Shown: piece by piece, positions 34,751 through 36,461 of the stretch
Layout of the letters: each line of letters starts with the position of its first letter
Numbering within the stretch: the first letter of the stretch is position 1
Source of the DNA: Scyliorhinus canicula
Taxonomy: Eukaryota
DNA length: 64,000 nucleotides
NCBI RefSeq assembly: GCF_902713615.1
Contig: NC_052167.1
Location: forward strand, 558,001 to 622,000
Reading direction: 5' to 3'
Notes under the pieces: generated by a model
The model's input: the letters and a program-made list of their open reading frames with translations, nothing else
Database searches by the model: none
Told to the model about the DNA's origin: nothing
Made by a program: the position numbers and the translations under genes

Positions 34751-35730
34751 GATGTGCAGCTGAAGAAGAGAGAAGCCTTCATTTTTATTGGTGGTTTGTC
34801 CACTTCCAACCCTGTGTGCCCAAGGGTAATTCGACTTGCACCTTGTTCATGGATGGGCTCAATATCTTCATAACAGTACATCATGGGTTTTAAAATTTAC
34901 AACAAATCCTCCACAAGAAAAATATTAATTCACCATCTTTAAGAATTGCCAGCAATAGACTTTTGAAGCCATTCACTATCTGATGTTAGATTGGGGAAAA
35001 TGTCACTATGGTACCCCACAATATACAATAATTACCAAGAAATCCTGTTGGATTATGATATAAAAGCCAATTCCATTGATTTCAAATAGGATAGCAGATC
35101 AACATCATTCCACCTAGTCGATGTTGGGCTAAGTAGTGAACAGTTCTGTAAACCAGATTCATGAAAGCAACCTTAGTAGAATTTACAAGTTCTGATGTTG
35201 GAACTGACTCCTTGCCTATCGGGAGATGAAACCTCATCAGAATTCCAGAGAGGGCCTTTTATTTGGATTTGATACAGTTTCAAAATTCATAATTCCTTGC
35301 TCCTTGACTGCACCATGTGAACCGTTGAGCTGAATCGTGTTCAAGGGAGAGCTGGATAAACACTTGAGGGAGAAAGGAATTGACAGTAGGGTAGATTGGG
35401 TGACATTGAAGAAAGCTGGGAGGGAACATGTGTGGATCGTAAACCTCTGGCTAAGGGGAGGCTATGGCATAGTGGTATTGTCGCTGGATTCATAATCCAG
35501 ATGCTCTGGTGACCCAGGTTCAAATCTCACCACTTGACCATTGTTGGCTGCCGTAAAAGCCCATCTGGTTCTGGAACTCTGGCCTGCATGTGACTCCGGA
35601 TCCATCCTCTGAAAAGGCCTAGAAAGCCACTCATTAAAAAAAATGATGTGGAGATGCCGGCGTTGGACTGGGGTGAGCACAGTAAGAAGTCTTACAACAC
35701 CAGGTTAAAGTCCAACAGGTTTGTTTCAAA

Positions 35731-35765
35731 CACGAGCTTTCGGAGCACGGCTCCTTCTTCAGGTG
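35731..35765 (-). ncRNA. Mirror copy of the hammerhead motif (antisense strand)
   Basis: Exact reverse complement of 36288-36322. Confidence 0.72.
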
Positions 35766-36287
35766 AATGGAAAGGCTTGTTCCAGAAATGTTTATATAGA
35801 CACAGTCAGAGATGCCCCGGAATGCGAGCACCTGCAGGCAATCAAATCATCAAAGATGCAGAGAGAGAGGTAACTCCAGGTTAAAGAGGTGTGAATTGTC
35901 CCAAGCCAGTTCAGTCGGTAGGTCTCTGCAAGTCCAGGCTTGTTGGTGGGGGCCGAATGTAATGCGACATGAATCCCAGATCCCGGTTGAGTCCGCATTC
36001 ATGCGTGCGTATTATAGCATGCGTCCGTCTTATAGCTAAGTTCCGCACGCATGAATGCGGACTCAACCGGGATCTGGGATTCATGTCGCATTACATTCGG
36101 CCCCCACCAACAAGCCTGGACTTGCAGAGACCTACCGACTGAACTGGCTTGGGACAATTCACACCTCTTTAACCTGGAGTTACCTCTCTCTCTGCATCTT
36201 TGATGATTTGATTGCCTGCAGGTGCTCGCATTCCGGGGCATCTCTGACTGTGTCTATATAAACATTTCTGGAACAAGCCTTTCCATT

Positions 36288-36322
36288 CACCTGAAGAAGG
36301 AGCCGTGCTCCGAAAGCTCGTG
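36288..36322 (+). ncRNA. Minimal type I hammerhead ribozyme motif (pre-mRNA sense strand)
   Basis: CAC-CUGAAGA-A-GGAGC-CGU-GCUCC-GAAA-GC-UC-GUG. It has an intact CUGANGA/GAAA core, a 5-bp stem II, a palindromic AGCU stem III and a CAC/GUG stem I. Predicted cut after 36319. Confidence 0.75.
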
Positions 36323-36461
36323 TTTGAAACAAACCTGTTGGACTTTAACCTGGTGTTGTAAGACTTCTTACTATTAAAAAAAATGACATGCTTCTGAGTT
36401 GTAAATACCACGCAAGAAAGATTGCATCGATTGAATTTCGTCCAGATTGCATTTCCCCCAT

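What the first reader, a model, noticed from the sequence alone, without database searches (positions are those of the whole stretch)
35633..36386. 329-bp palindromic Penelope insertion with a hammerhead ribozyme in each arm, inside a CAMK2G intron
Seen: two arms in which I found no mismatch (35681-36009 and 36044-36372), a 14-bp TSD, a 34-nt extension on one arm only, a GIY-YIG-like C-terminal peptide and an intact minimal hammerhead core (CUGAAGA...GAAA, palindromic AGCU stem III). Established: Penelope-like elements make inverted pLTR insertions with a short 3' tail, and carry minimal hammerheads thought to cleave as dimers. Inference: one ribozyme lies on the CAMK2G pre-mRNA strand, but its perfect antisense arm is transcribed first. 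The hairpin could therefore trap the ribozyme and protect the host transcript, acting as a built-in safety catch. That could explain why inverted copies survive in introns. The lack of divergence implies an active family and possibly a polymorphic site.
Basis: partly seen in the sequence, partly recalled or inferred. Interest (0 to 1): 0.85.

Follow-up and report, generated by a model that had tools for sequence, protein, structure and literature searches.

The report
Polymorphic palindromic Penelope retroelement insertion
A very recent 740-bp insertion of a shark Penelope-like retroelement, absent from some individuals, sits as a perfect inverted repeat in a CAMK2G intron; its shape and small hammerhead ribozyme are typical of the family, and the proposed "safety-catch" role of the hairpin is untested and probably unnecessary.

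Summary
Two arms of 329 bp (35681-36009 and 36044-36372) are perfectly complementary. A 14-bp target-site duplication flanks them, and a 34-nt tail sits on the left arm only. Each arm holds a minimal hammerhead and the last codons of a GIY-YIG endonuclease ORF. The host is a CaMKII-gamma-like gene on the + strand, and the insertion lies in the intron between the exons near 19.7 kb and 39.65 kb.

Every feature matches the published anatomy of Penelope-like element (PLE) insertions. The hammerhead core is invariant in homologous copies from three other shark-derived sequences. They differ only at N7, loop II and H17 and at stem-II positions that keep pairing.

New here: short-read contigs from two other samples of the same species carry the exact empty site, so the insertion is polymorphic and young. 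One correction: the 34-nt "spacer" is 19 nt of stuttered filler plus 15 nt of the right copy.

The "safety catch" is not supported. A lone minimal hammerhead is reported to be essentially inactive. Raw RNA reads show no ends at the predicted cut. Inverted dimers are a routine product of PLE integration. This allele is too young for selection to have acted on it.

The scan had already noted similar palindromic Penelope inserts elsewhere in this genome, in ATE1 and TFB2M introns.

The parts
35633..35646 (.). Left copy of the 14-bp target-site duplication (ATTAAAAAAAATGA). Its last 4 nt also match the family's tail continuation.
   Evidence: the empty-site contigs carry this 14-mer once; family loose ends start at 35643-35645
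35647..35680 (-). 34-nt 'tail': the element's own sequence continuing past the normal 3' end, present on the left copy only.
   Evidence: The same sequence follows the arm end in L004, in L005 and in an organism-B contig. Published PLE tails are 30-40 bp (PMC8557442, PMC11167929).
35681..36009 (-). Left copy, 5'-truncated. It reads antisense on the + strand and forms the 329-bp arm.
35734..35762 (-). Minimal hammerhead on the - strand (C3 at 35762; predicted cut after 35734).
36010..36028 (.). 19-nt junction filler, not family sequence. It is part of a near-tandem 19-nt duplication (36000-36018 and 36018-36036, 17/19 identical) that repeats the join.
   Evidence: Family contigs diverge from the window upstream of 36029.
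36029..36372 (+). Right copy, 5'-truncated and sense on the + strand (344 nt). Positions 36044-36372 form the 329-bp arm. It has no tail.
36029..36142 (+). Last 37 codons plus the stop codon of the element's ORF (LIAKFRTHECGLNRDLGFMSHY...), the C-terminus of the GIY-YIG endonuclease domain.
36256..36263 (+). TATA-like box (TATATAAA) about 30 nt upstream of the hammerhead. PLE pLTRs are reported to hold the promoter. This is read from the sequence and was not tested.
   Evidence: PMC6765202 for pLTR promoters
36291..36319 (+). Minimal hammerhead on the pre-mRNA strand: CUGAAGA, an unpaired A, a 5-bp stem II with a 3-nt loop, GAAA, the GC palindrome, U16.1 and C17. The cut is predicted after 36319.
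36373..36386 (.). Right copy of the target-site duplication.
39652..39726 (+). Downstream CaMKII exon ([25 protein letters not shown]). With the exon near 19.72 kb it bounds the intron that holds the insertion.
   Evidence: best solved-structure match 2v7o, CaMKII gamma, 37.7 bits against 28.7 or less for other isoforms

Best explanation
This is one recent integration event of an endonuclease-bearing Penelope-like retroelement (PLE) into an A-rich site in a CAMK2G-like intron. Both outer ends of the insert are element 3' ends, that is, reverse-transcription start points. The left copy started at the distal start site and so carries the 34-nt tail. The right copy started at the proximal site and has no tail. 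The two 5'-truncated copies (363 and 344 nt) were joined head to head at almost the same element position by a template switch or snap-back that left 19 nt of stuttered filler. Staggered nicks 14 bp apart gave the target-site duplication. The hammerhead in each arm is the family's conserved pLTR ribozyme, which came along as a passenger. On the host pre-mRNA the insert would fold into a 329-bp perfect hairpin that buries the single sense ribozyme. That is a physical side-effect, not a selected function. Shown: the anatomy, homology to the PLE ORF family, comparative conservation of the hammerhead, and presence/absence polymorphism. Inferred: the order of steps in integration, the snap-back at the centre, and the absence of any functional role.
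For: The anatomy was measured directly. The empty site, with a single copy of the 14-mer, is present in contigs of two other samples of the same species: X3 record 17 and X4 record 25 join 35632 to 36373. These contigs sit on a flanking haplotype that differs at 36628, 36683 and 36711. An X2 contig crosses the left junction, running from 35300 to 35663 with no mismatch. The tail is the element's natural continuation in L004, L005 and an organism-B contig. The distances from the predicted ribozyme cut to the two insert ends are 53 and 87 nt. In the anole PLE the cut lies 26 nt into the ORF and reverse transcription starts 111-118 nt in, which is 85-92 nt from the cut, and the tail is the stretch between two start sites. 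That enzyme cleaves and extends both DNA strands at AT-rich ATT sites (PMC11167929). An inverted 5'-truncated copy plus a one-sided 30-40-bp tail is the published PLE signature (PMC8557442). The ORF fragment matches shark proteins with a YIGET...RMNGHR...GEHF...GLNRD pattern. GIY-YIG scores E=0.0017 in P0007 and hits 4 of 21 homologues, and RVT_1 lies upstream in 3 of 21. For the hammerhead, the core is invariant in four homologous copies, N7 is A/U/C/C, H17 is C/C/A/U (never G), all loops differ, and stem II shows one G-U and one compensatory change with all 20 stem II cells paired. Many other near-symmetric antisense-to-sense joints of the family occur in genomic contigs: 6 of 15 listed lie within 3 nt of mirror symmetry (permutation P=0.009).
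Against: No reverse-transcriptase sequence lies at this locus, so the PLE assignment rests on the 37-codon ORF end, the pLTR, and the architecture. The GIY-YIG Pfam match in P0007 (19 bits) is below the curated cut-off of 22.6 bits; the scores of the other matching homologues were not listed. Rfam calls no hammerhead. The right junction and the centre were not among the contigs the tool listed, so only the left junction of the filled allele is supported outside the assembly, and X2 may be the same individual as the assembly. Two-sided priming and snap-back cannot be told apart from sequence. The covariation test on four sequences has no statistical power (127 of 500 shuffles reach the observed value).
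Confidence: 0.85

Rival explanations
1. Safety catch. The antisense arm, transcribed first, traps the sense hammerhead in a hairpin. This protects CAMK2G pre-mRNA from self-cleavage, and that protection is why inverted copies persist in introns.
For: The geometry is right: the gene is on the + strand, the antisense arm comes first, and the sense ribozyme lies near the far end of the second arm. The hairpin is far more stable than the ribozyme fold (-707 against -13.3 kcal/mol). An intronic ribozyme can lower host expression when it is fast enough (Cpeb3 ribozyme, PMC10919898). A preprint reports that retrozymes are under-represented in Xenopus introns (10.64898/2026.07.22.740005).
Against: In published tests PLE min-HHR monomers showed no detectable cleavage and dimers only weak cleavage (PMC4209133, PMC6765202). 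The anole PLE ribozyme cleaved only with the element's protein, and no in vivo reads ended at its cut site (PMC11167929). Here only one sense copy lies on the pre-mRNA, so no dimer can form in cis. Three raw RNA runs showed no pile-up of ends at 36319/36320 or 35733/35734. Inverted dimers follow from the integration chemistry. In L004 the antisense arm is 62 nt and does not cover the ribozyme. The allele is absent from other individuals, so it has not been filtered by selection.
Confidence: 0.06
2. The palindrome was not made at this site. It is a retro-copy of a pre-existing palindromic (fold-back) non-autonomous element, mobilised as a unit from a master locus.
For: Some antisense-to-sense joints of the family have contig depths hundreds of times the single-copy depth, for example 35763 to 36292 at depth 2011 in X2 against about 6 for the flanks. 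That suggests some fold-backs are multicopy. Another first-reader note in this scan proposes such a family (s1-195940).
Against: The left end coincides exactly with the family's tail terminus, which is a reverse-transcription start point and not a random 5' truncation. No listed contig from any run covers the filler 36010-36028, and family contigs begin at 36029.
Confidence: 0.07
3. Assembly fold-back artefact: the palindrome does not exist in the animal.
For: Palindromes are a known failure mode of long-read assembly. PLE inverted structures are reported to cause assembly problems (PMC8557442). Only the left junction is seen in an independent data type.
Against: An artefact would not produce a 14-bp target duplication that matches the empty allele exactly, a one-sided tail identical to the family's natural continuation, or a non-palindromic filler. 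An X2 short-read contig crosses from unique flank 17 nt into the tail without a mismatch.
Confidence: 0.02

Closest known systems
Canonical EN+ Penelope-like element insertions (Penelope/Poseidon/Neptune type) with an inverted 5'-truncated copy and a 30-40-bp tail (Evgen'ev & Arkhipova 2005; PMC8557442; PMC11167929)
   Same: Inverted 5'-truncated copies, a 34-nt tail at one end only, a hammerhead in the pLTR, a C-terminal GIY-YIG ORF end, an AT-rich target, a TSD, and a ribozyme-to-end spacing like that of the anole element.
   Different: The insert holds only the terminal 344-363 nt of the element and no RT. The two arms are truncated at nearly the same position, 15 nt apart. The centre carries a stuttered 19-nt filler. 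The PLE clade was not determined.
PLE minimal hammerhead ribozymes (Cervera & de la Pena 2014, PMC4209133; Lunse, Weinberg & Breaker 2017, cited in PMC6765202)
   Same: [quoted passage not shown]
   Different: Helix I has only 3 continuous pairs in this copy. Activity is untested. No Rfam model recognises it.
Non-LTR retrozymes (tandem hammerhead repeats derived from PLE pLTRs; preprint 10.64898/2026.07.22.740005)
   Same: Short non-coding pLTR-derived units that carry the same class of hammerhead.
   Different: Retrozymes are direct tandem repeats that can excise and circularise a unit. Here the two ribozymes lie on opposite strands, so no unit can be excised from a single transcript.
L1 twin-priming inversions (Ostertag & Kazazian 2001; cited from memory)
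   Same: Both strands of the nicked target are thought to prime reverse transcription, which gives an inverted structure flanked by a TSD.
   Different: L1 inversions join different segments of one RNA. Here both arms are the same 3'-terminal segment, so the product is a true palindrome.
Intronic inverted-repeat SINE pairs such as primate IRAlus (from memory)
   Same: Long intramolecular dsRNA hairpins inside pre-mRNA introns that are generally tolerated.
   Different: IRAlus are two independent, diverged insertions. This is a single-event, 100% identical 329-bp duplex.

Membership tests
EN+ Penelope-like element (PLE) insertion | PLE/telomerase-like reverse transcriptase ORF | tested here: inconclusive
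   The insert is 5'-truncated and holds no RT. Homologues of its ORF end carry RVT_1 upstream in 3 of 21 members. The clade-specific RT signature was not examined. The best genomic relative (L005) has an assembly gap where the RT should be.
EN+ Penelope-like element (PLE) insertion | C-terminal GIY-YIG endonuclease | tested here: met
   The 43-aa reading (window 36011-36139) that contains the ORF end matches shark ORF fragments (best E=4e-13). Their alignment shows VVYLIRC...YIGET...RMNGHR...GEHF...GLNRD. Pfam GIY-YIG scores E=0.0017 in P0007 and hits 4 of 21 members, best 2.3e-4. The P0007 match is below Pfam's curated cut-off, so this is met by motif and weak profile evidence.
EN+ Penelope-like element (PLE) insertion | pLTR carrying a hammerhead motif downstream of the ORF stop | tested here: met
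   The stop is at 36140-36142 and the hammerhead at 36291-36319. The same order is seen in L004 and L007.
EN+ Penelope-like element (PLE) insertion | [quoted passage not shown] | tested here: met
   The 34-nt tail is on the left copy only. It equals the family's continuation beyond the arm end.
EN+ Penelope-like element (PLE) insertion | Adjacent inverted 5'-truncated copy, a TSD and an AT-rich target | tested here: met
   (the empty site carries one copy of the 14-mer).
PLE minimal hammerhead (min-HHR) | Catalytic core CUGANGA ... GAAA ... UH in type-I order | tested here: met
   The core is invariant in four homologous copies.
PLE minimal hammerhead (min-HHR) | Unpaired nucleotide between 9 and 10.1, G10.1-C11.1 pair, palindromic 15.2-16.2 | tested here: met
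   A at 36298, G36299-C36311, and GC at 36316-36317. All are invariant across the four copies. The criteria are from PMC4209133.
PLE minimal hammerhead (min-HHR) | Helices I and II maintained by compatible changes | tested here: inconclusive
   Stem II has all 20 cells paired, with one G-U change and one C-G to A-U change. Helix I has 3 invariant pairs. With only 4 sequences, 127 of 500 shuffles do as well.
PLE minimal hammerhead (min-HHR) | Self-cleavage at the predicted site | tested here: inconclusive
   Three poly(A)/oligo-dT raw-read runs show no excess of RNA read ends at 36319/36320 or 35733/35734. These libraries capture such ends poorly. Biochemistry cannot be done with these tools.
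Rfam hammerhead families | Score against the curated covariance models | tested here: not met
   No hammerhead hit at gathering threshold in the window, nor at E up to 10 in 2 kb or in 76 nt.
Non-LTR retrozyme | Direct tandem repeats with a same-strand hammerhead in each unit | tested here: not met
   The two motifs are on opposite strands, and there is no direct repeat of the unit.

The most novel reading that the evidence does not exclude
Inverted-dimer PLE insertions are kept preferentially in sense-oriented intronic positions because the first-transcribed antisense arm masks the ribozyme (and the pLTR promoter) on the host pre-mRNA. If so, the element's odd integration products would work as a built-in way of reducing harm to the host.
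Probability: 0.06. Interest if true: 0.7.

Novelty: new member of a known kind. Interest (0 to 1): 0.3.

Why it matters
The locus is a clean natural example of a PLE integration product with both alleles available. The filled and empty sites together fix the target, the TSD, both reverse-transcription start points and the central join to the base. This agrees with the two-start-site, both-strand model derived in vitro from an anole element. The presence/absence polymorphism points to PLE activity within the recent history of this shark species. The near-symmetric central joins, with stuttered filler, bear on how the inverted copies are joined, which is still unresolved. The conserved hammerhead from Heptranchias to this species shows long-term constraint on the ribozyme in shark PLEs. 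Nothing here requires a new kind of system.

Tried and rejected
Rfam at gathering threshold on the window, and at E up to 10 on 2 kb and on 76 nt, gave no hammerhead. Pfam and the ESM Atlas on the 43-aa peptide alone gave nothing, because it is too short. An exact-product look-up of a 68-aa arm ORF found no record. The RT upstream of the Chiloscyllium relative L005 is hidden by a 2-kb assembly gap, which I left as it is. Three NCBI shark loci could not be fetched. A profile of the ORF family against solved structures gave only a weak top hit to phage T4 endonuclease II, a GIY-YIG enzyme by my own knowledge (E=0.21). I first noticed that both copies would be 363 nt if the whole spacer belonged to the right copy, and considered synchronous synthesis by a dimeric RT. 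I rejected this once the organism-B and X4 contigs showed that family sequence starts at 36029, making the copies 363 and 344 nt. RNAcofold of two ribozyme copies gave an extended duplex and not the dimeric hammerhead, and my designed dimer structure could not be scored, so I draw no conclusion from it. ARAGORN found no tRNA in the SINE-like stretch upstream.

Full report
**Observation**

- Positions 35681-36009 and 36044-36372 are reverse complements of each other over 329 nt with no mismatch.
- The 14-mer ATTAAAAAAAATGA stands at 35633-35646 and again at 36373-36386, exactly at the outer borders.
- Between the left 14-mer and the left arm lie 34 extra nucleotides (35647-35680) with no counterpart on the right.
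- No other copy of the arm lies in the 64-kb window.

**Host gene**

Short kinase motifs place CaMKII exons on the + strand at about 19.72, 39.65, 42.0, 57.5 and 58.06 kb. The 25-residue exon at 39652-39726 scores best against human CaMKII gamma: 2v7o at 37.7 bits, against 28.7 or less for the alpha, beta and delta chains. The insert therefore lies in the intron between the 19.7-kb and 39.65-kb exons of a CAMK2G-like gene.

**What the repeat is**

The reading frame that runs from 36029 to the stop at 36140-36142 was searched, as the 43-aa translation of 36011-36139, against 1.84 billion representative proteins. It found ten short ORFs, the best at E=4e-13.

The 245-aa hit P0007 and its relatives all come from sharks: Mustelus, Scyliorhinus, Heptranchias, Chiloscyllium and Hemiscyllium. 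Aligned, they show the pattern VVYLIRC...YIGET...RMNGHR...GEHF...GLNRDLGFMSHY.
- Pfam GIY-YIG matches P0007 at E=0.0017 and 4 of 21 members at 0.01 or better. The P0007 match is below the curated cut-off.
- RVT_1 lies upstream in 3 of 21 members.

The window's peptide is thus the extreme C-terminus of an RT-plus-GIY-YIG ORF, the domain order of canonical Penelope-like elements.

**The hammerhead**

A descriptor with the published features of PLE minimal hammerheads finds exactly two hits in the window, one per arm. Shuffled windows give 0.04. On the + strand:
- C3 to A9 lie at 36291-36297, followed by an unpaired A at 36298.
- Stem II is GGAGC/GCUCC with a 3-nt loop.
- GAAA lies at 36312-36315, followed by the GC palindrome, U16.1 and C17 at 36319.

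These are the four traits Cervera and de la Pena list as emerging from PLE motifs beyond their search descriptor: a nucleotide between 9 and 10.1, G10.1-C11.1, palindromic 15.2-16.2, and membership of a family of variants with compensatory changes (PMC4209133). The local minimum-energy fold reproduces stems I and II, although it is no more stable than shuffles. Rfam's models do not detect the motif.

Homologous copies were recovered in an ENA metagenome contig (L004), Chiloscyllium punctatum (L005) and Heptranchias perlo (L007).
- The elements are only 72-81% identical overall, yet every core nucleotide is invariant.
- N7 is A/U/C/C, and the cleavage-site base is C/C/A/U, never G.
- All four loops differ.
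- Stem II shows one A-U to G-U change and one C-G to A-U change, and all its cells stay paired.

With four sequences the formal covariation test has no power (127 of 500 shuffles). Variation confined to the permitted positions is nevertheless what a constrained hammerhead predicts. Family reads in three RNA runs vary at the same places: 36295 (N7), 36304 (loop) and 36319 (C to A).

**Architecture compared with known PLE biology**

Craig et al. describe PLE insertions as 5'-truncated, often with an adjacent inverted 5'-truncated copy, and with a 30-40-bp tail at one end (PMC8557442). Frangieh et al. showed that the anole PLE enzyme cuts and extends both strands at AT-rich ATT sites. It starts reverse transcription internally at two adjacent sites, and the interval between them is the tail. 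The ribozyme cut lies 26 nt into the ORF and the starts 111-118 nt in (PMC11167929).

Here the predicted cut lies 53 nt from the tail-less end and 87 nt from the tailed end, the same geometry. The tail is the element's natural continuation. It follows the arm end in L004 and L005 and in a contig from a second organism.

**The centre**

Contigs from another sample (X4) and from organism B read family sequence up to 36029 and then diverge from the window. With the family's upstream letters, the frame reads ...RKIAEQKLIAKFRTHECGLNRD. So the right copy begins at 36029, and 36010-36028 is filler.

The filler is part of a 19-nt near-duplicate (36000-36018 against 36018-36036, 17/19 identical) that repeats the join between the two copies. 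I read this as a polymerase that switched template twice; that is inference.

The two copies end 15 nt apart in element coordinates. Genomic contigs show many other antisense-to-sense joins of this family. Of the 15 the tool listed, 6 lie within 3 nt of mirror symmetry, against 2.3 expected when the ends are permuted (P=0.009). This favours a snap-back or switch at a common point over two independently terminated cDNAs, but the listed joins are a selected subset.

**Age and reality of the insertion**

- In Logan contigs of other samples of the same species, X3 record 17 and X4 record 25 run from 35632 straight to 36373. This is the empty site with one copy of the 14-mer, at single-copy depth, on a haplotype that also differs at 36628, 36683 and 36711. 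With 31-mers, such contigs need real molecules.
- An X2 contig runs from unique flank to 35663, 17 nt into the tail, without a mismatch. It supports the filled left junction in short reads, although X2 may be the assembled individual.
- Zero differences in 658 bp suggests at most a few million years at about 1e-9 substitutions per site per year. That rate is my assumption, and arm-to-arm conversion could also erase differences.
- Family stretches identical to the arms occur at contig depths hundreds of times the flank depth, and about half of the laid RNA reads are at least 99% alike. The subfamily is young and transcribed somewhere in the genome.

**The safety-catch idea**

As RNA, the insert folds into one hairpin of -707 kcal/mol, against -13.3 for the ribozyme region alone. 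Since the complement is already present when the ribozyme emerges, masking is very likely on physical grounds.

What is missing is a hazard.
- Monomeric PLE min-HHRs showed no detectable cleavage and dimers only weak cleavage (PMC4209133; PMC6765202).
- The anole ribozyme cleaved only with the PLE protein, and no in vivo reads ended at its site (PMC11167929).
- The pre-mRNA holds a single sense copy.
- In three raw RNA runs, no excess of read ends appears at 36319/36320 or at the mirror site. The locus itself has no coverage in these poly(A)/oligo-dT libraries, so nothing can be said about its own transcript.
- The inverted form is a product of integration. In L004 the antisense arm is 62 nt and stops short of the ribozyme.
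- An allele missing from other individuals has not been tested by selection.

Two points stand on the other side. An intronic ribozyme can reduce host expression if it is fast enough (Cpeb3, PMC10919898). A preprint finds retrozymes under-represented in Xenopus introns (10.64898/2026.07.22.740005). The hypothesis is therefore not absurd, only unsupported here. It needs the genome-wide census set out under the decisive next steps.

**Verdict**

This is a textbook, very young, polymorphic PLE inverted-dimer insertion with the family's conserved minimal hammerhead. It is a new member of a known kind. Earlier notes of this scan report similar palindromic Penelope inserts in ATE1 and TFB2M introns, and a fossil of in vivo cleavage at another locus. 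I did not test those.

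Noticed in passing
window 35673, - strand: In two oligo-dT RNA runs, 151 of 542 and 437 of 1567 laid reads begin exactly at 35673, the 8th base of the tail in element sense. They run out past 35643 into other sequence. 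This could be a real RNA 5' end of the family or a local-alignment effect of a diverged, abundant subfamily. It is unexplained.
   Followed up: partly
window 35643-35646 and beyond (loose ends): The commonest continuation of family reads past the tail reads, in element sense...CACATCATGGATACTG... This suggests that the element's ORF start codon overlaps the end of the tail. Agreement among the reads was only 0.4-0.5, so this is tentative.
   Followed up: no
window 35458-35646: The insertion target is the A-rich end of a repeated stretch with a sub-threshold tRNA-like head (Rfam tRNA 17.7 bits at 35458-35522; ARAGORN finds nothing). Contig depth there is raised in DNA runs. It is probably the tail of a tRNA-derived SINE.
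   Followed up: partly
window 47500-48725: A minisatellite of a 32-bp unit, at least 38 copies, 94% matches, inside the next CAMK2G intron. The array may start before 47500.
   Followed up: partly
window 36029-36372 compared with an organism-B contig (X37 record 3): A contig from a different organism label matches 344 nt of the right copy with one mismatch, at depth 21. The arm's sampled words are also held at 0.86 in organisms B and C. Either the species are very close, shark substitution is very slow, or the subfamily spread recently between them.
   Followed up: no
L005 5870-5897, - strand: A second, different minimal hammerhead (stem II GGGC/GCCC, ACGU palindrome) in the Chiloscyllium locus, presumably from another PLE family.
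   Followed up: no
L004 91-152 and 153-683: Another inverted PLE structure: a 62-nt antisense tail-plus-end fragment joined directly to a longer sense copy that has its own tail. The arms are very unequal, and the antisense arm does not reach the hammerhead.
   Followed up: partly
window 35362, 36628, 36683, 36711: Flanking SNPs that distinguish the empty-site haplotype (X3, X4) from the reference filled haplotype (X2).
   Followed up: no
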